60,288 bases of DNA from assembly GCF_001194135.2 (NCBI RefSeq), contig NC_068988.1:44584571-44644858 (forward strand). The letters run 5' to 3'. Positions 4,481-57,036 of this stretch are shown piece after piece. A model generated the notes under the pieces. That model saw only the letters and a list, made by a program, of their open reading frames with translations, did no database searches and was not told where the DNA came from. A program made the translations under genes and the position numbers. Source of the stretch: Octopus bimaculoides (lineage: Eukaryota). How positions within the stretch are numbered: the stretch's first letter is position 1; every line of letters begins with the position of its first letter.

Positions 4481-4543
<63 letters not shown>

Positions 4544-4562
4544 ATATGTATGTATATGTGTT

Positions 4563-4596
<34 letters not shown>

Positions 4597-4719
4597 TATA
4601 GTAGACTTACTTGCAAAAAAGGACGTGTGCATTCAATAATGTAATAATACAAAGAATATATATACATGTATACACACATATATGTACATACTTACATCTA
4701 CATGTGTATATACATGCAT

Positions 4720-4899
4720 ATCAGGGTACAGGACGTTAGAACAATAAACTACAGACAACGGAACGAACACATAGGAAAACGGAAAGCCACTTGGAATATC
4801 CCTTCATCAGCTGTCTCTATTCTATCTAGACGTTTCGAAGACAAGACAGAACGTACTCTAGAATAGTCTCTTCCTGAGTAGTGGATCAACCCACTAATG
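4720..4899 (-). mobile_element. Penelope-type terminal repeat with twin degenerate hammerhead-like motifs (copied at 5355-5533)
   Basis: Minus strand reads CTCAGGA-agagac...gtcttc-GAAACGTC, then gacag-CTGATGA-aggg...ttc-TAACGTC-ctgt. A homologous copy lies at 28990-29160 (+). Confidence 0.45.
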
Positions 4900-5132
4900 N
4901 NNNNNNNNNNNNNNNNNNNNNNNNNNNNNNNNNNNNNNNNNNNNNNNNNNNNNNNNNNNNNNNNNNNNNNNNNNNNNNNNNNNNNNNNNNNNNNNNNNNN
5001 NNNNNNNNNNNNNNNNNNNNNNNNNNNNNNNNNNNNNNNNNNNNNNNNNNNNNNNNNNNNNNNNNNNNNNNNNNNNNNNNNNNNNNNNNNNNNNNNNNNN
5101 NNNNNNNNNNNNNNNNNNNNNNNNNNNNNNNN

Positions 5133-5177
<45 letters not shown>

Positions 5178-5196
5178 ATATGTATGTATATGTGTT

Positions 5197-5230
<34 letters not shown>

Positions 5231-5658
5231 TATAGTAGACTTACTTGCAAAAAAGGACGTGTGCATTCAATAATGTAATAATACAAAGAATATATATACA
5301 TGTATACACACATATATGTACATACTTACATCTACATGTGTATATACATGCATATCAGGGTACAGGACGTTAGAACAATAAACTACAGACAACGGAACGA
5401 ACACATAGGAAAACGGAAAGCCACTTGGAATATCCCTTCATCAGCTGTCTCTATTCTATCTAGACGTTTCGAAGACAAGACAGAACGTACTCTAGAATAG
5501 TCTCTTCCTGAGTAGTGGATCAACCCACTAATGTAGTAGAGTACAGCATAAAACTCATCCACCTTCAGATTCCACCCTGTGCTAGACTCTAGTAGTATTA
5601 TATGTACTTCCAGGGTTGTGTTTGGGCATGTCATGTGAATAAATAATTTTAAAAATTT

Positions 5659-6075
5659 GAAGTCAACAAGTAGGGGTATGGTTGAACATTTATTTTTTAA
5701 TCACTACAGTTTTTTTGATGCAACATTGTTCTCCCGGTGTGCAGGTACTTGATTAGATAACTGTTTCCCTGCATTATGAGAATTAGTTGTGTTTCCTCAG
5801 GTGATATGTGAATATTGTCTCTGTAAGTTCACATTCTTGGCTTCAAGAACATCCTTTCTGTCTGTCATGGCCTGAATTTAGTAGTAGTCACTGAGTTTAT
5901 CATGGTGAATTGTTGCTGAAGGACAATTATCACCTGAGAAAACACAACTAGATCTCATAATGCCGGGAAACAGTTGCATAATCAAGTACCTGCATGCCTG
6001 GTGAACTATGTTGCATGGAAACAATTGTAGTGATTAAAAAATGAATGTCCAACTGTACTCCTTCTTGTTGACTCC
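5659..6075. mobile_element. MITE-like element with ~148-bp inverted arms
   Basis: 5659-5806 is the reverse complement of 5928-6075, about 80% identity by eye (gaagtcaacaag.../...cttgttgactcc, gcaggtacttgatt/aatcaagtacctgc). Confidence 0.75.
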
Positions 6076-6189
6076 AAATTATTTCAATTATACATATACT
6101 ATTAGATAATAAATCGTATAGTATAAACCTGGTAGCTTACTGGTAAAGCATGTTCACTTTCACAGTGTTTGTTGGGTATTTGATTAATG

Positions 6190-6470
6190 AGAGAGAATGA
6201 AAGATGGAAGATACAAGAATGTTTATGGATCACTCATCCACCACCAACCTCTCATGAGATTTGCTGCTTTTGCATACACATACTGAGAATAAAAACTGTG
6301 GAACAGACATTATTTTAATGAAACACATCTCGTCATCCCCTGAAGAGACACATCTACACTGACAGATACTCCTAAGCCAGTTGTGGAGTATCCCACTCAT
6401 GAAGGATCGATGCTAGATGGGTTGAAACAATCGTAGAGATCAATAAACATTCTCATATCTTGCATCTTCT
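6190..6470 (+). mobile_element. Penelope-like element 3' end / terminal repeat remnant with a degenerate hammerhead motif
   Basis: RWKIQECLWI resembles a PLE GIY-YIG C-terminus. It is followed by GAAAC..GTC..CTGAAGA (6320-6347), a perfect 8-bp hairpin gatactcc/ggagtatc (6365-6392), and CTCATGA...GAAAC-aatc-GTA-gagat (6396-6440). Confidence 0.45.
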
Positions 6471-6788
6471 GTCTCCCTCATTAAACGAATAAATATCATC
6501 ATCATCATCCTCATCATCTTGGCATGAGCTGGATGGTTTGACAGGACCTGACTACATTAGACTCCAGTGATTGTTTTGGCATAGTTTCTATGGATGGGTT
6601 TCCATTCTATTGGCAACAACTTCAAGATGCTAATATTTATTCCCACTTAAATGTGGATGTTCTGTTAGATCAAACTTTGCTGTGGTAGATACAATGAAAG
6701 AAACTCTCACATAGGCTTTTGGGGCCAAACACATGCTTGTTTATATTGCTAGCAGGGACATAAATCCCTACCAACTCCAGCACCTAGA

Positions 6789-6835
6789 CCACCAGATCAT
6801 GTGATTTTGACTTCCCTTGGTCTCATCAGTGATGG
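6789..6835 (-). ncRNA. Type I hammerhead ribozyme with a core lesion (G12 to A)
   Basis: Minus strand reads ccatca CTGATGA gac-caagggaa-gtc AAAA tc-acat-ga TC tggtgg. All three stems pair, and stem I extends through a bulge (agcagccaag-tgt / t-ctaggtgct), but GAAA reads AAAA. Confidence 0.7.
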
Positions 6836-7145
6836 ACACTTGGCTGCTAGAGATAGCAATGACTCACCTCCCTGCCAGGGATATATAGAAGATCAGTGCC
6901 AGAACTGGTGCTGGAGTTATGATTAACCAGTAAGCTTGTTAGAAAACATATATTAGTGAGAGAAGCGGTATTAAAACAACTAAGAAGTAACATTTATTCC
7001 CACTGAAACATGGATGCTCTGTTAGAATGAACTTTACTGTAGTATATATCATGTGAGAAACTCTCATATAAGTTTTTAGTGCAAAATACATGGGTATTTA
7101 TATCACTAGTGGGGAGATTAATCCTCACCATCTTCAGTACCATAA

Positions 7146-7192
7146 CCATCAGATCGTATGATTTCAATCTATCTTGTTCTCATCAGTGATGA
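7146..7192 (-). ncRNA. Type I hammerhead ribozyme, core intact, stem II weakened
   Basis: Minus strand reads tcatca CTGATGA gaac-aagata-gatt GAAA tc-atac-ga TC tgatgg. Stem I is 6 bp (one G-U), stem III is AUC/GAU with a 4-nt loop, and the AUC cleavage triplet puts the cut between 7152 and 7151. Stem II has an A-A mismatch and a G-U pair. Confidence 0.75.
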
Positions 7193-7390
7193 ACGTTCAA
7201 CTGCTAGAGATAGCAGTGATTCACCTCACCACCAGCGATATACAGACAGTCAGTTCTGAACAGGCACTGGTGTCATGATTAGCCAGTAGAGGGTACTGGG
7301 TGGTTTTTTTAGTGTAACCAACACCAATGGGATTGCTCAGTAGCTCACAAGATAATACCCCTTGATTGAGGGGATATATGTATATACACA

Positions 7391-7435
<45 letters not shown>

Positions 7436-7571: not shown

Positions 7572-10500
7572 ATACACACACATATTTATAAACACTGTTA
7601 ATTCTGATTGTATTGGAGTTCATTCTATGAACCATCTGATATGCATATATTTGTTATTTCATTTTGTTTGCAATAATGGTAAATTATTCATAGCTAAATC
7701 ATTTGGTAAGAAGATATTAAATATTAGATTATTTTTTTACACTCTGGCATCTTTGATTTTAAAAATGGTGATTTTCTGCAAACCCCAGTTTATCTTTTGT
7801 AATGCATTACATCTTCTGTCAGTGATTTTCTCCTGGATTCAACTTATATTATATTTTTCTACATATTGATAATTTAGTGTTCATTTATCCAACATGCCAC
7901 ATGTTGTGCAAATGTTAATTCAGATACACATAGATATATATATTGAATATATACATGTTATATTAAATAACATAAAATATATAATATCCAGATGACACTC
8001 CCTGACAGAAATTTTATTAACTTCCTCATTACTTACATGTGAAAAAACAACAACAAAAAAACACATGCGTTATATTTTCTTGTAGTTGCATAGGCAAATA
8101 TGTTTACGTCAAACCCAGCCTGTCAATGAGTTAAATATAATTTGCCTAATAATTTTCTGTCAGATTTTTACTGAAATCCCATTATAAATCTTGAAAGATT
8201 TGAAAACTTTAAATATTGCCATCTTTAACAGACATTGAAAGAAAAAGAAAAAAAAAATGTAGTGAAAGAAAAAAGTCATTGAATATGTTTTTGTGTAGAA
8301 ATAGTCTTTTGAAAATAACTCATTTAGTTTAGTCATATTGAAATGTATTCAGTTTAAATTATTTAGAATAATGCCTAAATATGTTCCTTTGACAGTATTG
8401 CATGTGTTTTTTATGTTTAACTTCATTTTTATTGCTGTTTCTTTTTCTATCTTAAACCAATTTGTATTTAAATGGCAAAATCTGTAAAAGAAATGGAAAG
8501 AAAACATAGAAAACTGTTTAAAAACAATATTGCATACTTGAGGTGGGGTGAAATTAATGCTTGTAGAAGCTTGACTCTCTTTTCTTTCAAAATAAAGCAA
8601 AATATCGACTGAGCATTTTTGAAGTGTTGAGGAATTAAACATTATTCCATAGAAGTAACTTTTTGTTTTTTAGAAAAATTAATAAAGAAGGAAATTTAAA
8701 TGTAGCAGTGAAAGTGATGAGTCAGTGTCTCCTCTTGTTTAAATGAGGAATTATTTCTTTTGTTTTTAGAATTCATTTTTAAAATAATGGAGACATTTGA
8801 CCTAAATTTCAATGTCTAAAGCAAACAAATTTAACGTGATTACATTTAGCAGAAATCAACATGGAAGAGAGAGACAAACTTTCAAAAGGAAATCATGTCC
8901 AGGAGGAATGAAATGTTCTGATAATGAGAAAAATCAGGACTTTCAGCAAATGTTATTCTAAAGATTTCAGAGCACAAATTGACTAATTCTTCAAATTGAT
9001 TTTTAATCCTGAACTCCTTCCCTAGAGATATAATGGAAACACTCTTCCACTCCACCAAAAAAAACAAAAAAAAGAAAAAAAAAACAAAAGCAAAAAATAC
9101 CAGCAACAACAACAAAAACAACATGTGCACAACATTGAAGAAAGTTAAAATTGTCATATTTTGCCTTGTGTTTCCAATAGTTTGGAAGGTTCTTTTAATA
9201 TGGAAACCCATTTACCATATTTACTTAGATCGGTCTGTTTTATCAGGGAACTAACATACATTCTCTTGACAATACTTCACTGAATCACTCTGAGTTTTTA
9301 GTTCATTGACTTTGGATCTCATGAGAAAGATGAGGTCAGACGATGCATGATCCAGCAAACCCATTTCACTGCCAGTCATCACTTTCTTTTGAGGATCATT
9401 CACTGAACCATGCCCTTCATATGAATTTTTTTCATCTCACTGGTAATGAATTTTGGCATAAAATTGTTGCCAGAATAATCACCATTTTACATCAAAGCAA
9501 ATCTATCGTTTGATTTTTACTACTTATAACTTATAGCAGTTGCAGCATGGTTTGATGCATTTTGGCAGGTTCATCTGTCAACCGAATATTAGGAGCTTAG
9601 TCATAGAACTGCTGTAAATGGCCATTAACCAGAGAAAGCTATGTGTGCTTTAATTTGTCATTCCAAAAAGAAAAAGAAAAATGAACCCTGGGCCAAGTGA
9701 GATGTAAAATCTGTTAAGGAATGTGATTTCCCATGAAATCTATTAAGAGTAGAGACAAATAAAATGTCCTTTCCATTGAAAGAGGGTTCTTATCTTAGAC
9801 ATAGGAGAATTTTGCTTGTTCAGAAAATTCTTGTTTTGTTTTTGTTCTATTTTATTGCAACCCCGTTTCACGAAATGACTAATTCTTGCTCGAAAATAGA
9901 AATAACAGGAAGGAAAAAAGAATGTAAAGCATAACAGCCATGTTACAACACAAGAATTTCCCATGGAATTATTTTGAAAGAAATTGGTAAGGGGGAAATA
10001 TTTAACCCTCCCAAAAGAAATTTATTTTTTATTTGTATATTTATTTTCATAATTAAATTTTGAAATTAAATTTCTTTATGAAAAATTCTTAATAATCTTG
10101 AAATATTTTGAAATGGAAATTAAATAATTTGAATGTATTTTTATATAGTTTTAATCAATTAAATTCAATGCATTTGGATTCTAAGATCAATGCTTGTAAA
10201 TCATTTTTTTATGTATAAAACAAATTCTTATATTTTTAAAAACCAAAGTATTTGAAAAATGAAAAAGTTTAAACATTCTCAGATTCATTTTATTTCTATC
10301 CTTCCTGGAATAGTTTCAATGAGTCAAAAGTTAAGAATTCCAATATTAAAATGCTAATGCAAAGAAATTAATTTTTCTTTTGATTTACAATTCCAATTTT
10401 GATGACCACTCAGATAAAACATTAGCCCGGTCCTTATTTGATATCTTGTAAGTCTGGGTGGTCTTGCCATTGTGGTTTAAGCCCAAGTATTGTACAAATC

Positions 10501-20260: not shown

Positions 20261-21310
20261 TTCATCGTTGTCATTGTCATCGTCATCATCATCATCTTCA
20301 TGTCCATTTATATCAGTTCTTGCATGGGTTAGACAAAATTCTTGAAGCAATATTATATGCTTATATGCCTTCCTGGTTCTAACTGTTAATTGTTTTAAAG
20401 AAAGGTACTTGGTTCCAAATCTCATGCCAAACTTCTAAGCTATTGGAATATTTATTGTTTATGTGAGACAGTGGAATATAATCATTATCACCATTGTCCT
20501 AGGAGTATTTAACACTTGTACAGAATAAGGCAACATGTCAGAATCATTAGCACCCTTTTCAAAATACTTAGTTCAAATTCTGACAAAATCAACTTTGCCT
20601 TTCATCCTTATGGGGTCAATAGAATGGTACCAGTTGAGCACTGGAGTCGATGTAATTGACTTATCCCACACCCACAAAATTGCTGGCCTTGTGTCAAATT
20701 TTGAAACCAGTATTAGTCCAGAGTAAGGTGGAAACTGGCAGACTCATTTTTCCTTACATGAACAGCAAATGGATACCTCTGTTATACAAAACTGATAATT
20801 TCTGATGTATATTATCTGATATATATCTGTAGTTTTATTGTTTGTTGTTTGTATACATTATAGTGGCACATGAAAAGACATTCGAGCGAGATCGTTGCCA
20901 GTGCTGCTGGACTGGCTCCTGTGCAGGTAGCATGTAAAATACACCATTTCAAGTGTGGCCGTTGCCAGTACTGCCTGACTGGCCTTCATGCCGGTGGCAT
21001 GTAAAAGCACCCACTACACTCTTGGAGTGGTTGGCATTAGGAAAGGCATCCAGCTGTAGAAACTCTGCCAAATCAGATTGGAGTCTGGTGTAGCCACCCG
21101 TCGTAGTCAAATCGTCCAACCCATGCTGGCATGGAAAGCGGACGTTACATGAAGATGATGATGATGATAGTATTCAATATTGTTCATACAAGCTGTGTAG
21201 TTTACTTGCAGTCAATTGTGACAGCTGTTCCAGACTTCATGGTGTGTTTTGATTTGTTGCCTGATCTTTTGTTAACAAAGACACATTCAAAAACTATTTC
21301 TTGCTTCCAG

Positions 21311-21907: not shown

Positions 21908-23058
21908 ATCACACACACACACATACACACACATATACACACACACACACACAAGCAAACAAACAGTCACATATATTTACATATTTCTACATTTTTCTTT
22001 AATATAAATATAGTTTCTGAAGATTCAAACATTCACAGCATTCATATTGGATATTTATAATTTAAATGAAATTTTAAATATTGATCAGAGAATATGTTTG
22101 ACACATGTATATACATACAGACACACACACATAGACTTATTCACATACTAAATGACACACACAAATACAACGGATACACATATACATATACAAACACATA
22201 CAGATGTACATATGTTTACACCTGGACAGACATCCATATTAATAATATAAAACTAGCATTCCATCAGTTACAATGATGAGGTCCCAGTTGATCTGGTCAA
22301 TGGAACAGCCTGCTCATGAAATTAACATGCATGTGGCTGAGCTCTCCATGGACATGCATACTCTTAATGTAGTTCTCTGAGAGATTCAGCATGACATGGA
22401 ATGTAACAAGGCTTGCCTTTTGAAATAATGGTACAACTCATTTTTGACAGCTGAATGGACTGGAGCAATGTGAAATAAAGTTTCTTGCTCAAAGACATAA
22501 TGCACCACTGGGAATCGAACTCCTGATTTTATGATCATGCACCAAAGGTCCTAACCACTAAGCCACACACCTTCACAAATAATATAACTGAATAAAAAGA
22601 TGTTCTTTTGGGTAATATAGTCGTTCCTTAGAATTCAAGAGAAGATGGAAGAACTGTCAAATAATAGCTAATTAATACCAATACATACTTCAAGACTGTT
22701 CCAAAACTTTACCATTTATATTTGTCTAGTTCCTCTCTTTCTCCAGGGATTACAACTGGCCAGGATATGAAACTGAAACATGTCATACATGGCCCACAGG
22801 AGGAAGAACAATCTGGAATTAAACACGATCAATAGAAATTATATTAATATTTAGAGAGATAAAAAAAGAATGAACCAATCTGAAGAATAATGAAAGCAAT
22901 AAAGATATAGAAGTGACAACATAATAATCTTGAGAACTAATAAAGTTAGTTCCAAGGATCTTTAATAATTTTAACTGAAGATATTAACACTTGATGTACC
23001 AACTTGGAAAAGCTGTACATTTAATAAGGAAGTGATGATTCCTTTGCAAAAAAGAATG

Positions 23059-38820: not shown

Positions 38821-39730
38821 TTGGGTTATCCCATAAATAATGCGTTTTTTTTCAGTTGCATGAACTAAAAGTCAGAGCGGGATGGGATAAACTACCTGCA
38901 TCAACTTGCTATAAAAACAGGTTGTAATTTTACCTTGTCCTTATTCTTAGTGCAAGTTTTGAAAAGTGCAGTTCGATTTTAACAGTTATTTTTTCAAAGC
39001 TATAATAAAAGTGACAAAGGAGCATATTTGGCATATTTTGCTTTATGAATTCAATAAAGGCAACAACACAATGAAAAGTGTGAGGAATATTGAAGCAGTA
39101 TATGGGGAACAGATAATAAGCATAAGACAGTTTCAATGGTGGTTCCAGAAATTCTGAACCAGAAATTACAGGCTAGAAGTCAAGTCTCATCCTGGAAGGT
39201 CTGTAGAGCTCAATGAGGATGTTCTGCAAACCCTGGTAGACCAAAATCCCATCGTAACTGTTGAGGAACTAACGAGAAGCTTGGATTTGGTCATTTAACC
39301 ATTTATTGACACCTGTGTGCCATCAGAAAAGTCAACAAATTGGGTCTATGGGTTCCTCACAAACTTTCCGAGTTTAATTCTGTGCAGAAAGTGAATGTGT
39401 GCTCTTCTTTGCTGTCACATCTCACGAATGAACATTTTTTGGAGCGAATAGTGATTGGTGATGAGAAATGGGTTCTCTATAAAAGTGTCAAGCACCGAAG
39501 ACAGTGGGTAGGGAAAGGAAAAGCATCGGCACCCCAGGCTAAAGAAGGTTTTCACCCACATAAGGTGTTGTTATGAAAGGTTTGGGATATGAAATGTTTA
39601 GTCCACTTTGAACTTTTGAAGCCAAACAAACGATAACAAAGGAGATCTACTGCGAGCAGCTTAAGTCATTGCTAGGAGAAAAATGACCATCTTTGGTTTC
39701 AAGACAAAAGGTGTTCTTCCATCAGGATAA
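38821..39730 (+). mobile_element. Mariner (DD34D-type) transposon, 3' truncated and frameshifted
   Basis: TA followed by TIR ttgggttatcccataaataatgcg. Translation includes KEHIWHILLYEFNKG...YGEQ...QWWFQKF, LWVPHKL, RIVIGDEKWVLY, HPHKVLL and FHQD. Confidence 0.92.
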
Positions 39731-45011: not shown

Positions 45012-45085
<74 letters not shown>

Positions 45086-45092
45086 TTATATA

Positions 45093-45915
45093 CAGGGTAC
45101 ATAAGGTATTTGAGGACACACCTTTTTGGGACCATTGCTGTATATTTTGCTAACTCTGTATAATCCTTGTTTCAGAAAATAATAATAGCAGACCCTCAGC
45201 TTACTCAGAAAATGAAGAGGCATGCTGTTATTTTGGTTATAAAGGCTGAGCATAGTGATTTAGAAATATCTCGATTCTTAAAAGTTGCCAGATCTTTTGT
45301 CTACAAAGTTTGTAAGGAGCTAGAGACTGAAGATGGAATCGTATCACCAGTATCATTGCATAAAAAGCATTCTAAACACTCTGAAATCATCAGAACACCT
45401 GAATTTATCCAGCAAGTTCAACAGACCATTGATTACAATCTCAGAAAGTCCATGAGCTCAATTACAAAAGATCTCCATGTGTCAGAAGGAACAGTCAGAA
45501 ATGTTGTCTACGGAAACATGAGATATAAATCTTATATGATGAGGAAAGGTCAATTTGTCCGCAAAAGCAAAAGCAAATCATTACATCAGATCTAAAAGGC
45601 TCTTAAACAAACTGGAAAATCTAGCAGAAAAATATTTGATTTGGTTTTTCTCAAACGAGAAACACTTCAACCAAGATCAAAAAATTAACAGAAGAAATGA
45701 CAGATGGTTATATGCAGACCCTACTAACGTTCCAAGTGTTATGCATAAAAAAATTTCCTGCAACTGTCATGGTTTTAGGGGTTGTCAGCAATGAAGAACA
45801 TGTGAAGCCTCATTACTTCTTTCCACAAGGCCCTAGAGCTAACTCTACTGCCTACATTGAGGTCTTGGAAATAATTGTTAAGCCCTGGATAGACAGTGTA
45901 TGCAATGGAAGGCCA
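45093..45915 (+). mobile_element. Tc1/mariner DD37D (maT/Bmmar1-like) 5' part, frameshifted
   Basis: TA followed by cagggtac. HTH-like N-terminus MKRHAVILVIKAEHSDLEISRFLKVARSFVYKV, then WFFSNEKHFNQDQKINRRNDRW and KFPATVMVLGVVS...YIEVLEIIVKPW. Ends before the second Asp, so the family call rests on motif style only. Confidence 0.8.
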
Positions 45916-46099
45916 ATCCTAAGCATTATACTAATACATCTGTTTGTTGTCTACATCACCTGTCTTCGTCTTTTGTTGTTTTTTTTGTGAATTCTCCCTA
46001 TATATATATATATATGTAAATCCGAAAGAAGAAGCAGACTCCAAGATGTAGAGCAGTATATATTTAAAATGGTGAAGATCGGTTTATGGGATTACCTTA

Positions 46100-46511
46100 G
46101 GTTTCTTGTTCATAAAGGGTTTAGCTTTATGGCATATCATCAGATCCCCAAAACATGTTGGCCTGGAATGTTCATCAATATCGACATTTTTTGGGCCATC
46201 TTGGAAACGTCTGAACCACTTGTACACTTGTGTGTAGCTCATGCACTCTTCTCCATACACTTGCTGCAACTTTGCGCAGGCCCCTGAGCAGATATCGCCA
46301 TGATAACTTTCTCTGTCATGGTCAATGTGACAATCACACACTACACATCTTCCTTCCAAGCACTGTTGTAAACAGCAGAAGTGAGTTAAAATATTAAAAC
46401 TTGGTGCACATGCACACAGAGTTCAAGGTCAATCTTTGCTAGCAGCTTTACTCTGCGTACTTTAGCCTTGTTACTATGGCAACAGTCTGGATACTTATTG
46501 ATCAGACCTCG
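46100..46511 (-). mobile_element. Mariner 5' fragment
   Basis: TA plus TIR cgaggtctgatcaataagtatcc at 46513-46490. Translation KLQQVYGEECMSYTQVYKWFRRFQDG..VDIDEHSRP is a mariner HTH. Confidence 0.85.
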
Positions 46512-47982: not shown

Positions 47983-48500
47983 CCATCATCATTTAATGTC
48001 TGTTGTCCATGCTAGCATGGATTGAATGGTTTGACCAGGGCTGGCATGCTGGAAGTCTGCACCAGACTCCAGTCTGATTTGGCATGGTTTCTACAGCTGG
48101 ATACCCTTCCTAATGCCAGCCACTCTGAGAGTGTAATGGGTGCTTTTACGTGCCACTGACACAAGTGCCATTTGCATGGCACCAGTGTCTGCCATGACTA
48201 CGATTTTACTTGCCTTGATGGGTCTTCTTCTCAAGCATGGCATAATGCCAAAGGTCTCAGTCATTCATCATTGCCTCCGTGAGACCCAACACTTGAAAGG
48301 TACTTTTCACATGCTACCCACATTGGCCACCTTGCCTCTGTGAGGTGCCATCTTGCCACCTTGCTCGAAAGGTGCTTTTTATGTGCCACCAGCATGGATG
48401 CCAGTCATGTGACACACGCATTATATATTTGATCTTCACTTCATGTTTATTATTATTGTTTTCGTTTCTTTGTCAAAGCTCTTTCATCACATTCTGTGCC

Positions 48501-56733: not shown

Positions 56734-57036
56734 TGGCACGTGAAAAACATTCGAGCGAGTTCGTTGCCAGTACTGCTGGACTGGCTCCTGTGCAGGTGGC
56801 ACGTAAAATACACCATTTCGAGTGTGGCCCTTGCCAGTACCTCCTGACTAGCCTTCGTGCTGGTGGCACGTAAAAACAGCTACTACACTCTCGGAGTGGT
56901 TGGCGTTAGGAAGGGCATCCAGCTGTAGAAACTCTGCCAAATCAGATTGGAGCCTGGTGTAGTCATCTGGTTCGCCAGTCTTCTGTCAAATCGTCCAACC
57001 CATGCTAGCATGGAAAGCGAACGTTAAACGATGATG
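56734..57036 (+). mobile_element. SINE family C, RTE-like 3' tail ending in (GAT)n
   Basis: Internal repeats of tggcacgtaaa..., then ggaagggcatccagctgtagaaactctgcc...ccaacccatgctagcatggaaag..cgttaaacgatgatg. Other copies at 836-1165 (-), 6500-6625 (-), 20863-21169, 21620-21790, 25190-25455, 37705-37960 (-) and 47951-48412 (-). Confidence 0.8.

What the first reader, a model, noticed from the sequence alone, without database searches (positions are those of the whole stretch)
6630..7292. Tandem 357-nt repeat with one type I hammerhead ribozyme per unit: candidate cephalopod retrozyme / circRNA system
Seen: two diverged head-to-tail units, each with stem I - CUGAUGA - stem II - (G/A)AAA - 3-bp stem III - AUC - stem I on the minus strand (7146-7192 and 6789-6835). 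Predicted cleavage sites are exactly 357 nt apart. Stem I differs between copies but stays paired (ccatca/tggtgg versus tcatca/tgatgg), loop III differs (acat/atac), and stem I of one copy extends through a UGU bulge. Established: metazoan non-LTR retrozymes are non-coding tandem repeats of a few hundred nt with type I hammerheads that are processed to monomer circRNAs and are thought to be mobilised by autonomous retroelements. Inference: this is an ageing copy of such a family. One unit has G12A and the other a weak stem II, so this locus may be inactive while intact copies exist elsewhere. I cannot tell whether the family is already described in this species.
Basis: partly seen in the sequence, partly recalled or inferred. 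Interest (0 to 1): 0.85.

Follow-up and report, generated by a model that had tools for sequence, protein, structure and literature searches.

The report
Decayed hammerhead-ribozyme tandem repeat in octopus
Two worn head-to-tail copies of a 357-base non-coding repeat in an octopus genome each carry a damaged hammerhead self-cleaving RNA motif at the tip of a long RNA hairpin. This looks like a dead relic of the already known 'retrozyme' class of circular-RNA mobile elements, not a new kind of system.

Summary
Window 6615-7290 (minus strand) is a two-unit tandem repeat with period 357 and about 75% identity. Rfam Hammerhead_1 aligns end to end in that register but scores only 15.6 and 13.7 bits against a threshold of 34. 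One copy has G12A and the other a crippled helix II, so neither is likely to cleave.

New here: each motif caps a 144-nt imperfect hairpin that is much more stable than shuffles on the ribozyme strand only (z -2.8 and -3.9). This points to a structured RNA rather than a chance motif.

The ribozyme is no better conserved than the rest of the unit, and the stem changes do not exceed chance. The window is from an octopus, since it shares repeats with Octopus sinensis. It contains no reverse transcriptase or GIY-YIG ORF.

No other family copy could be obtained, so family size, intact copies and circRNA remain untested.

Best reading (about 0.7): a fossil dimer of a non-LTR retrozyme, a new member of a known kind. 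Interest is modest.

The parts
6615..7290 (-). Tandem array of about 1.9 units of a 357-nt non-coding repeat. Unit 1 homology block is 7290-6975, unit 2 is 6932-6615.
   Evidence: 75-76% identity, spacing 357, only 4 gap columns; no other copy in the window
6933..6974 (-). Inter-unit segment present once. It has no counterpart upstream of unit 1 or downstream of unit 2, so the array reads U-s-U.
   Evidence: alignment; blastn limits
7146..7192 (-). Hammerhead-like motif, copy A. The core is intact (CUGAUGA, GAAA, AUC). Helix I is 6 bp and helix III 3 bp with loop AUAC. Helix II is weakened (G.U, A-U, A.A, C-G). Predicted cleavage is between 7152 and 7151.
   Evidence: RF00163 model 1-45/45, 15.6 bits vs gathering 34; energy of the hammerhead fold only -1.4 kcal/mol
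6789..6835 (-). Hammerhead-like motif, copy B. It has CUGAUGA, helix II with 3 of 4 pairs (GACC/AGUC), AAAA in place of GAAA (G12A), and helix III of 3 bp with loop ACAU. Predicted cleavage is between 6795 and 6794.
   Evidence: RF00163 model 1-45/45, 13.7 bits
7099..7242 (-). 144-nt imperfect hairpin (an extension of helix I) with hammerhead A at its tip
   Evidence: the enclosing 181-nt segment 7085-7265 folds at -53.1 kcal/mol, z -2.81, 0/200 shuffles as stable; antisense z -0.25; consensus structure
6742..6885 (-). 144-nt imperfect hairpin with hammerhead B at its tip
   Evidence: the enclosing 181-nt segment 6728-6908 folds at -68.9 kcal/mol, z -3.92, 0/200 shuffles; antisense z -1.64; consensus 41 pairs, none broken, energy z -3.5 vs column shuffles
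6795..7151 (-). Predicted 357-nt monomer between the two cleavage sites. It would be released only if both ribozymes cut.
   Evidence: coordinates; whole-monomer fold -82.6 kcal/mol, z -0.75; the half outside the hairpin has z 0.00
7201..7216 (-). Small hairpin CUGCUA-UCUC-UAGCAG, 8 nt upstream of helix I. The copy in unit 2 is at 6844-6859 and differs by one wobble-compatible change. This is the best conserved stretch of the unit.
   Evidence: 87% identity in the 30-nt window 7230-7201
6495..6627 (-). Flank: a 5'-truncated SINE-like element with a (GAT)n tail. It lies on the same strand and directly abuts the 3' end of the array.
   Evidence: 72% to 21020-21126, also 48064-48124 and 56889-56965; the same repeat family occurs in O. 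sinensis locus L001
7363..7580 (.). Flank: (TG)n and (TCTA)n microsatellites about 70 nt upstream of the array

Best explanation
This is a fossil insertion of a non-autonomous, hammerhead-bearing retroelement of the metazoan non-LTR retrozyme class, related to Penelope-like elements, in an octopus genome.

How the living element is thought to have worked:
1. A head-to-tail multimer was transcribed from the minus strand.
2. In each unit the type I hammerhead cut after C17 of the AUC triplet. The hammerhead sat at the tip of a long helix-I hairpin that brings the monomer ends together.
3. This released a 357-nt linear RNA with 5'-OH and 2',3'-cyclic phosphate ends.
4. A host tRNA ligase (RtcB type) circularised it.
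5. A reverse transcriptase supplied in trans (probably from a Penelope-like element) copied the circle into multimeric cDNA, which integrated.

At this locus the two units have since drifted about 25% apart at a uniform, neutral-looking rate. The downstream ribozyme has lost the general base G12 (G12A). The upstream one has lost half of helix II. The pair can therefore no longer release a monomer.

Shown here: the repeat, the two motifs and their defects, the strand-specific hairpins, the absence of coding capacity and the octopod origin.

Inferred: ribozyme ancestry, circRNA formation, trans-mobilisation, and the existence of other family members.
For: - Period and anatomy: 357-nt head-to-tail units, each with one motif in the same phase.
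- RF00163 aligns globally (model 1-45/45) at exactly these coordinates in both units.
- Helix lengths 6/4/3 and loop sizes equal the canonical metazoan type I hammerhead found in retrozymes. They do not match the minimal hammerheads of autonomous Penelope-like elements (PMC4209133; PMC7229834 supplement).
- Every helix II pair is intact in at least one copy, and G12 is intact in copy A. A fully canonical ancestor therefore follows from single substitutions.
- Tight-descriptor matches: 0 in 300 shuffled windows.
- Each motif caps a 144-nt hairpin with z -2.8 and -3.9 on the ribozyme strand, against -0.25 and -1.64 on the opposite strand. About 20% of the pairs are G.U, and no DNA-level inverted repeat was detected. 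This indicates structure at the RNA level. The experimentally validated coral retrozyme gives a similar z of -3.6.
- Unit size and GC (357 nt, 37.8%) are close to the mussel retrozyme (353 nt, 36.8%).
- There is no ORF with homologues, and no RT or GIY-YIG domain in the window.
- Cephalopods are known to carry Hammerhead_1 hits (235 in the giant squid) and Penelope-like elements.
Against: - Both motifs score less than half of Rfam's gathering threshold and were invisible in the normal window scan.
- The hammerhead fold is not the minimum-free-energy fold, and the short motif segments have z near 0.
- The ribozyme is no better conserved than its surroundings (36/47 vs 236/316).
- Compensatory changes (3) do not exceed the column-shuffle null (mean 4.0).
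- The whole 357-nt monomer is not unusually structured (z -0.75).
- No second copy was found anywhere I could look.
- No target-site duplication was found.
- The two units are not independent witnesses, since one duplication would copy a chance motif.
- Adjacent direct repeats are not rare in this window: 8 pairs with spacing 170-690.
Confidence: 0.7

Rival explanations
1. This is a chance hammerhead-like string. A local 357-bp tandem duplication of ordinary sequence, which happens to contain a long hairpin, copied a fortuitous CUGAUGA...RAAA...UC arrangement. There was never a ribozyme.
For: - Sub-threshold Rfam scores.
- No excess conservation of the motif.
- No significant covariation.
- A clearly chance-like relaxed match exists in the same window at 22969-23029.
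- At the shuffle rate, hundreds of relaxed matches are expected in a genome of a few Gb.
- No other family copy was found.
Against: - The tight form of the motif never occurred in 36 Mb of shuffled sequence.
- The Rfam model aligns globally with canonical helix and loop lengths.
- The defects are single substitutions away from a perfect hammerhead, and each is intact in the sister copy.
- The motif sits exactly at the tip of a strand-specific, highly stable hairpin formed by extension of helix I.
- Unit size, GC and non-coding nature match known retrozymes.
Confidence: 0.1
2. This is the remnant of an autonomous Penelope-like element, or of a plain non-autonomous derivative of one. Two pseudo-LTRs were formed by the partial-tandem insertion typical of these elements, with the internal region reduced to about 40 nt. 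It would have spread by ordinary target-primed reverse transcription and not through a circular RNA.
For: - The array reads U-s-U, with both ends at nearly the same phase of the unit. This resembles pLTR-body-pLTR.
- Penelope-like elements and their non-autonomous derivatives make head-to-tail insertions and favour microsatellites (PMC8557442). (TG)n and (TCTA)n lie about 70 nt upstream.
- A 2026 preprint argues that animal retrozymes are derivatives of Penelope-like pLTRs.
Against: - No RT or GIY-YIG ORF lies in or near the array, or anywhere in the window.
- The hammerhead is of the canonical type (helix I 6 bp, helix II 4 bp, helix III present). The minimal type reported for Penelope-like pLTRs has helix II of 7-8 bp, a short helix I and no helix III (supplement legend S1).
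- Microsatellites are so dense in this window (150 TRF rows) that adjacency carries no weight.
Confidence: 0.12
3. This is part of a composite SINE-like or satellite element that carries a hammerhead, in the manner of Schistosoma Sm-alpha or newt satellite 2. Alternatively it is a chimeric retrocopy, made when a LINE reverse transcriptase copied the 3' part of a SINE RNA and then switched template to a multimeric hammerhead RNA.
For: The 3' end of the array directly abuts, on the same strand, a 5'-truncated SINE-like element with a (GAT)n tail (6627-6495). The order 5'-captured RNA / 3'-SINE-plus-tail is what template switching produces.
Against: - Other copies of that SINE-like element in the window and in O. 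sinensis have no similarity to the 357-nt unit.
- No target-site duplication brackets the composite. The only candidate is a 14-nt repeat at chance level.
- Nested, unrelated insertions are the simpler reading in a repeat-dense region.
Confidence: 0.05

Closest known systems
Metazoan non-LTR retrozymes (Cervera & de la Pena 2020, PMC7229834), e.g. the Mytilus galloprovincialis 350-390-bp repeats
   Same: - Non-coding head-to-tail repeats of a few hundred nt (357 vs 353 in the cloned mussel unit).
- AT-rich (37.8% vs 36.8% GC).
- One canonical-type type I hammerhead per unit, in which helix I continues into a long self-paired region.
- No LTR, PBS or PPT.
   Different: - Only two units, about 25% diverged.
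- Both ribozymes are damaged (G12A; weak helix II) and sub-threshold in Rfam.
- No sequence similarity to the coral, mussel or axolotl units beyond the ribozyme core.
- Family size, transcription and circles are unknown.
- No retrozyme paper in the searchable library mentions cephalopods.
Hammerhead ribozyme type I, Rfam RF00163 (Schistosoma, newt and other metazoan satellite-type hammerheads)
   Same: - Same topology and register.
- CUGAUGA, (G)AAA and a UC cleavage site.
- Helix I 6 bp, helix II 4 bp with a 6-nt loop, and a short helix III with a tetraloop.
- Copy A's loop 2 (AAGAUA) resembles the model's CAAAUA.
   Different: - 15.6 and 13.7 bits against a gathering score of 34.
- A at position 12 in one copy.
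- G10.1-U11.1 plus an A.A mismatch in the other copy.
- A-U-rich helix III (AUC/GAU) instead of the G-C-rich consensus.
Pseudo-LTRs of Penelope-like elements with minimal hammerheads (Cervera & de la Pena 2014, PMC4209133; Craig et al. 2021, PMC8557442)
   Same: - Direct repeats carrying a type I hammerhead.
- Head-to-tail or partial-tandem insertions.
- Proposed source of the reverse transcriptase for retrozymes.
- Present in cephalopod genomes.
   Different: - No RT/GIY-YIG ORF between or beside the repeats.
- The hammerhead is canonical and not the minimal type.
Plant LTR retrozymes (Cervera et al. 2016, PMC4918200)
   Same: Non-autonomous elements in which two hammerheads delimit an RNA that is cut out and circularised.
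   Different: Plant elements have type III hammerheads inside roughly 350-bp LTRs flanking a 600-1000-nt body with PBS and PPT, plus 4-bp TSDs. None of these features is present here.

Membership tests
Metazoan non-LTR retrozyme | Head-to-tail tandem repeats with a unit of about 150-450 bp | tested here: met
   Two units, period 357, 75-76% identity
Metazoan non-LTR retrozyme | At least two consecutive units, each with a complete type I hammerhead (operational criterion of the 2026 preprint and of PMC7229834: intact CUGANGA / GAAA / UH and perfect helices) | tested here: not met
   Copy B has AAAA for GAAA (G12A). Copy A has helix II as G.U, A-U, A.A, C-G. RF00163 scores 15.6 and 13.7 bits vs 34. 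For this reason I file the locus as a decayed relic of the class and not as an active member.
Metazoan non-LTR retrozyme | Canonical-type (not minimal) type I hammerhead architecture | tested here: met
   Helix I 6 bp, helix II 4 bp with a 6-nt loop, helix III 3 bp with a tetraloop, in both copies and in the register of the Rfam model (definitions)
Metazoan non-LTR retrozyme | Non-coding; no LTR, PBS or PPT; GC below 50% | tested here: met
   The longest ORF starting at a start codon is 57 aa and has no homologues. No Pfam domain. No flanking long repeats. GC 37.8%.
Metazoan non-LTR retrozyme | Highly self-paired monomer RNA | tested here: inconclusive
   The 144-nt hammerhead-capped hairpin is strongly and strand-specifically stable (z -2.8 and -3.9). 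The other half of the unit has z 0.00 and the whole monomer z -0.75. Validated references range from z +1.2 to -3.6.
Metazoan non-LTR retrozyme | Multi-copy dispersed family in the genome | not testable with these tools
   No eukaryotic genome can be searched by DNA here. There is no second copy in the 60-kb window or in 21 kb of O. sinensis. The protein proxy search and the metagenome scans were empty.
Metazoan non-LTR retrozyme | Expression as monomeric linear and circular RNA | not testable with these tools
   No transcriptome access
Hammerhead ribozyme type I (RF00163) | Score at or above the family's gathering threshold | tested here: not met
   0 hits at gathering. Not listed at E<=10 in a 1.4-kb search. 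15.6 and 13.7 bits in 69-nt searches.
Hammerhead ribozyme type I (RF00163) | Conserved core: C3-A9 (CUGANGA), G12-A14, A15.1-U16.1, H17 | tested here: inconclusive
   Copy A has every core position. Copy B has all except G12, which is A.
Hammerhead ribozyme type I (RF00163) | Self-cleavage 3' of H17 | not testable with these tools
   This needs an in vitro transcription assay. From established hammerhead biochemistry, G12A is expected to abolish activity (my own knowledge, not tested here).
Penelope-like element pseudo-LTR | Direct repeats flanking an ORF with RT and GIY-YIG endonuclease | tested here: not met
   The units are directly adjacent, about 40 nt apart. A Pfam scan of 102 window ORFs (>=60 aa, non-repetitive composition) found only Mos1 HTH_48.
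Penelope-like element pseudo-LTR | Minimal hammerhead (helix II of 7-8 bp, helix I of 4-5 bp, no or vestigial helix III) | tested here: not met
   The architecture is canonical 6/4/3 (definition)

The most novel reading that the evidence does not exclude
The dimer is a fossil of an undescribed octopod retrozyme family that still has intact members. Those members would produce abundant ~357-nt circular RNAs from a hammerhead that caps a 144-nt hairpin. This would extend ribozyme-made circRNAs to cephalopods. A more speculative addition: the same-strand junction with a 5'-truncated SINE (6627/6628) would then record capture of retrozyme RNA by LINE/SINE machinery, and not by a Penelope-like element.
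Probability: 0.3. Interest if true: 0.5.

Novelty: new member of a known kind. Interest (0 to 1): 0.3.

Why it matters
If the family is real and alive elsewhere in the genome, octopuses would join corals, mussels and salamanders as animals that make abundant small circular RNAs with self-cleaving ribozymes. The unit found here would give the probe sequence needed to look for them. Cephalopod RNA biology is studied intensively, so an unannotated abundant circRNA class would be useful to know about.

This locus by itself is a neutral fossil and changes nothing in the field. It does show that a gathering-threshold Rfam scan and a standard TRF-based retrozyme pipeline both miss decayed copies of this kind.

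Tried and rejected
1. Rfam at gathering threshold over the whole window, and at E<=10 over 1.4 kb, listed no hammerhead. The alignments appeared only when 69 nt were searched.
2. TRF did not report the 357-nt period.
3. Exact look-up of two window ORFs in the contig index found nothing on record.
4. A six-frame pseudo-protein of the array was used as a proxy to fish ORFs called on other copies of the family. It gave 8000 word candidates, none with E<=0.01.
5. Two exact-pattern scans of JGI metagenome contigs (ribozyme pattern; hairpin plus ribozyme pattern) gave 0 matches.
6. 21 kb of the O. sinensis chromosome, fetched through a mariner homologue, shares many repeats with the window but has no copy of the unit. 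Its only RT fragment is LINE-like, not Penelope-like.
7. The supplements of the two Penelope-like element papers are not held. I therefore had no Penelope-like protein query and did not spend the last protein search on a sequence recalled from memory.
8. A literal search of paper texts for the ribozyme strings found only cloning linkers.
9. Comparison with the cloned coral, mussel and axolotl retrozymes showed no similarity beyond the core.
10. Covariation: RNAalifold gives 3 compensatory pairs, but column-shuffled alignments give 4 on average. I rejected this as evidence.
11. Rejected as signals:
- the 18-nt inverted match 6134-6151 / 6919-6936 (BLAST E=1.7);
- the 14-nt direct repeat 6460-6473 / 7807-7820 as a TSD (about 0.3 expected by chance);
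- adjacency to microsatellites as a Penelope-like signature, because microsatellites are everywhere in this window.
Full report
**1. What is in the sequence**

On the minus strand, window 7290-6615 holds two head-to-tail copies of a repeat.
- The repeat finder reports 6631-6897 vs 6988-7254, 76% identical, start-to-start spacing 357.
- blastn of the region against the window aligns 7288-6975 with 6932-6615 at 75.5% over 318 nt, and finds no further copy in the 60 kb.
- A global alignment gives 236/316 identities, 56 transitions, 24 transversions, 4 gap columns and K2P distance 0.32. Identity is a flat 67-87% along the unit.
- About 40 nt between the units (6974-6933) occur only once, so the array reads U-s-U and amounts to about 1.9 units.
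- TRF did not report the repeat.

**2. The two hammerhead-like motifs**

Read directly:
- Copy A, 7192-7146: UCAUCA / CUGAUGA / GAAC-AAGAUA-GAUU / GAAA / UC-AUAC-GA / UC | UGAUGG.
- Copy B, 6835-6789: CCAUCA / CUGAUGA / GACC-AAGGGA-AGUC / AAAA / UC-ACAU-GA / UC | UGGUGG.

Helix I is 6/6 paired in both copies, with one G.U in each. Helix III is A-U, U-A, C-G with a tetraloop. Helix II is 4 bp with one mismatch in each copy, and copy A also has G.U at 10.1-11.1. Copy B has A at position 12.

Every helix II pair and G12 is intact in one of the two copies. Single substitutions from a fully canonical ancestor therefore explain both (inference).

**3. Is it more than chance?**

- Rfam found nothing at gathering thresholds and did not list a hammerhead at E<=10 over 1.4 kb.
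- When only 69 nt were given, RF00163 aligned over its whole length (1-45/45) at exactly 7146-7192 and 6789-6835, with 15.6 and 13.7 bits against a gathering score of 34. The register is confirmed, but membership by score is not.
- My own descriptor scan found the two copies plus one weak AT-rich match at 22969-23029.
- In 300 dinucleotide shuffles of the window, the relaxed descriptor matched 0.007-0.01 times per window. The tight version (helix I 6/6, compact helix II) never matched.
- At that rate a genome of a few Gb would still hold some hundreds of relaxed chance matches. The motif alone does not settle the matter.
- The second copy is not independent evidence, because one duplication would copy a chance motif.
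- Adjacent direct repeats are not rare in this window, with eight pairs at spacings of 170-690. Most of these appear to be neighbouring copies of interspersed repeats, and one looks like an assembly duplicate.

**4. Independent support: a strand-specific hairpin**

- Folding 181 nt around each motif gives a long imperfect hairpin. Helix I continues for some 30 further pairs and the hammerhead sits at the tip (7242-7099 and 6885-6742).
- On the ribozyme strand the energies are -53.1 kcal/mol (z -2.81) and -68.9 kcal/mol (z -3.92). None of 200 dinucleotide shuffles does as well.
- On the opposite strand z is -0.25 and -1.64.
- About one pair in five is G.U, and no DNA-level inverted repeat was detected there. 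The pairing therefore makes sense for RNA of this strand only.
- The RNAalifold consensus of the two copies has 41 pairs and none broken. Its energy of -34.0 compares with -21.0 +/- 3.7 for column-shuffled alignments (z -3.5).
- The 3 compensatory pairs are not above that null (mean 4.0), so I do not count them as covariation.
- The rest of the unit is unstructured (z 0.00), and the whole monomer has z -0.75.
- For comparison, the same test on cloned, experimentally cleaving retrozymes gives z -3.6 (coral), -0.9 and -1.0 (axolotl) and +1.2 (mussel). The octopus hairpins are as structured as the best validated case, although such structure is not universal.

**5. No sign of selection since the duplication**

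- The 47-nt motif is 36/47 identical between copies (77%), the same as the unit as a whole.
- The two helix I differences are one-sided transitions to or from G.U. I estimate that about one time in four both would keep pairing by chance.
- The hammerhead fold is worth only -1.4 (A) and -5.5 kcal/mol (B) and is not the minimum-free-energy fold.
- G12 is the general base of the reaction (established hammerhead biochemistry, my own knowledge). Copy B should therefore be dead.
- Release of a monomer needs both cuts, so the locus is almost certainly inert.

**6. Surroundings and host**

- The window has 33.7% GC, many N gaps and very many microsatellites.
- A frameshifted Tc1/mariner transposase at about 45.1-45.9 kb has a 79%-identical protein in Octopus sinensis.
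- The 21-kb O. sinensis locus fetched through that protein shares the mariner (86% over 834 nt) and many SINE-like repeats (80-90%) with the window. The window therefore comes from an octopus.
- A Pfam scan of 102 window ORFs (>=60 aa, non-repetitive composition) found only the Mos1 HTH domain, with no reverse transcriptase and no GIY-YIG nuclease.
- On the ribozyme strand the array is preceded, about 70 nt upstream, by (TG)n and (TCTA)n. It is followed directly by a 5'-truncated SINE-like element with a (GAT)n tail (6627-6495).
- I found no target-site duplication.

**7. What it most likely is**

The anatomy matches the non-LTR retrozymes of animals:
- non-coding, AT-rich tandem repeats of 170-400 nt (mussel 350-390 bp);
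- one canonical type I hammerhead per unit;
- transcripts that self-cleave to monomers, are circularised (probably by tRNA ligase) and are thought to be copied by a reverse transcriptase supplied in trans (PMC7229834).

A 2026 preprint derives them from the pseudo-LTRs of Penelope-like elements. Published work associates the canonical 6/4/3 architecture with retrozymes, and associates minimal hammerheads with autonomous Penelope-like elements and Terminons. That favours 'retrozyme' over 'pLTR of an autonomous element'.

I therefore read the locus as a fossil dimer of such an element (confidence about 0.7). The units differ by K2P 0.32, roughly 0.16 substitutions per site per copy if they were identical at insertion. 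That implies an old insertion (inference).

**8. Rivals**

- A chance motif copied by a local duplication (about 0.1). The tight-descriptor statistics, the single-step path to a canonical ancestor and the hammerhead-capped strand-specific hairpin argue against it.
- A pLTR pair of a Penelope-like element or a plain derivative (about 0.12). The U-s-U layout favours it. The absence of an ORF and the canonical ribozyme type argue against it.
- A composite with the abutting SINE, or a template-switch chimera (about 0.05). Its only support is the same-strand junction.

**9. Membership and novelty**

The locus fails the operational definition of an active retrozyme, which requires two consecutive complete hammerheads, and it fails Rfam's threshold. 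I file it as a decayed relic that once worked like a retrozyme, not as a functional member.

Three things could not be tested: whether a family exists, whether intact copies exist, and whether circles are made. No eukaryotic genome or transcriptome can be searched by DNA with these tools, and the proxy searches were empty.

Type I hammerheads are already counted in a cephalopod genome (235 Rfam hits in the giant squid, PMC6962438). Cephalopods also carry Penelope-like elements (PMC8557442). No paper in the library links retrozymes with cephalopods.

The finding is at most a new member of a known kind. Interest is about 0.3.

Noticed in passing
window 6495-6627 (minus strand): A 5'-truncated SINE-like element with a (GAT)n tail lies on the same strand as the hammerhead array and directly abuts its 3' end. 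Other copies are at about 20879-21159, 48064-48124 and 56889-56965, and in O. sinensis. It could be a nested insertion or a template-switch chimera.
   Followed up: partly
window 5643-5806 and 5928-6091: A 164-nt inverted repeat, 84% complementary, with a 121-nt spacer. It is MITE-like or a long hairpin and lies about 500 nt from the array.
   Followed up: no
window 4499-4899 and 5133-5533: A 401-nt duplicate, 100% identical, on either side of the N gap 4900-5132. This is probably an assembly artefact and not biology.
   Followed up: no
window 45082-45915; also 38963-39573 (+) and 46087-46422 (-): Frameshifted Tc1/mariner transposase relics. The first is 86% identical at DNA level to a copy on O. 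sinensis chromosome CM016864.1. Pfam HTH_48 (Mos1) matched two stretches of one pseudo-protein, best in the ORF 38963-39154; I attribute the second to 46087-46422 (-) without checking.
   Followed up: partly
window 7363-7433 (minus strand): An Rfam mir-297 match of 42.8 bits (gathering 90) lies on the (TG)n microsatellite. This is a low-complexity artefact.
   Followed up: yes
window 22969-23029 (+): A weak, AT-rich match to the relaxed hammerhead descriptor (CUGAAGA core, 2-bp helix II, helix I 5/6). I judged it chance. It shows that relaxed descriptors give false positives in this genome more often than shuffles predict.
   Followed up: partly
window 7201-7216 and 6844-6859 (minus strand): A small hairpin CUGCUA-UCUC-UAGCAG, 8 nt upstream of helix I, is the best conserved stretch of the unit, with one wobble-compatible change between copies. 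In the long-hairpin fold its bases pair with the 3' arm instead, so the two folds compete.
   Followed up: partly
window 6460-6473 and 7807-7820: A 14-nt direct repeat (13/14 identical) brackets the microsatellites, the array and the SINE piece. About 0.3 such matches are expected by chance in 2 kb, so I did not take it as a target-site duplication.
   Followed up: yes
L001 16645-18103 (O. sinensis CM016864.1): ORFs that look by eye like a LINE-type (non-LTR) reverse-transcriptase fragment (no domain scan run). They are not Penelope-like, so they could not serve as a query for octopus Penelope-like elements.
   Followed up: no
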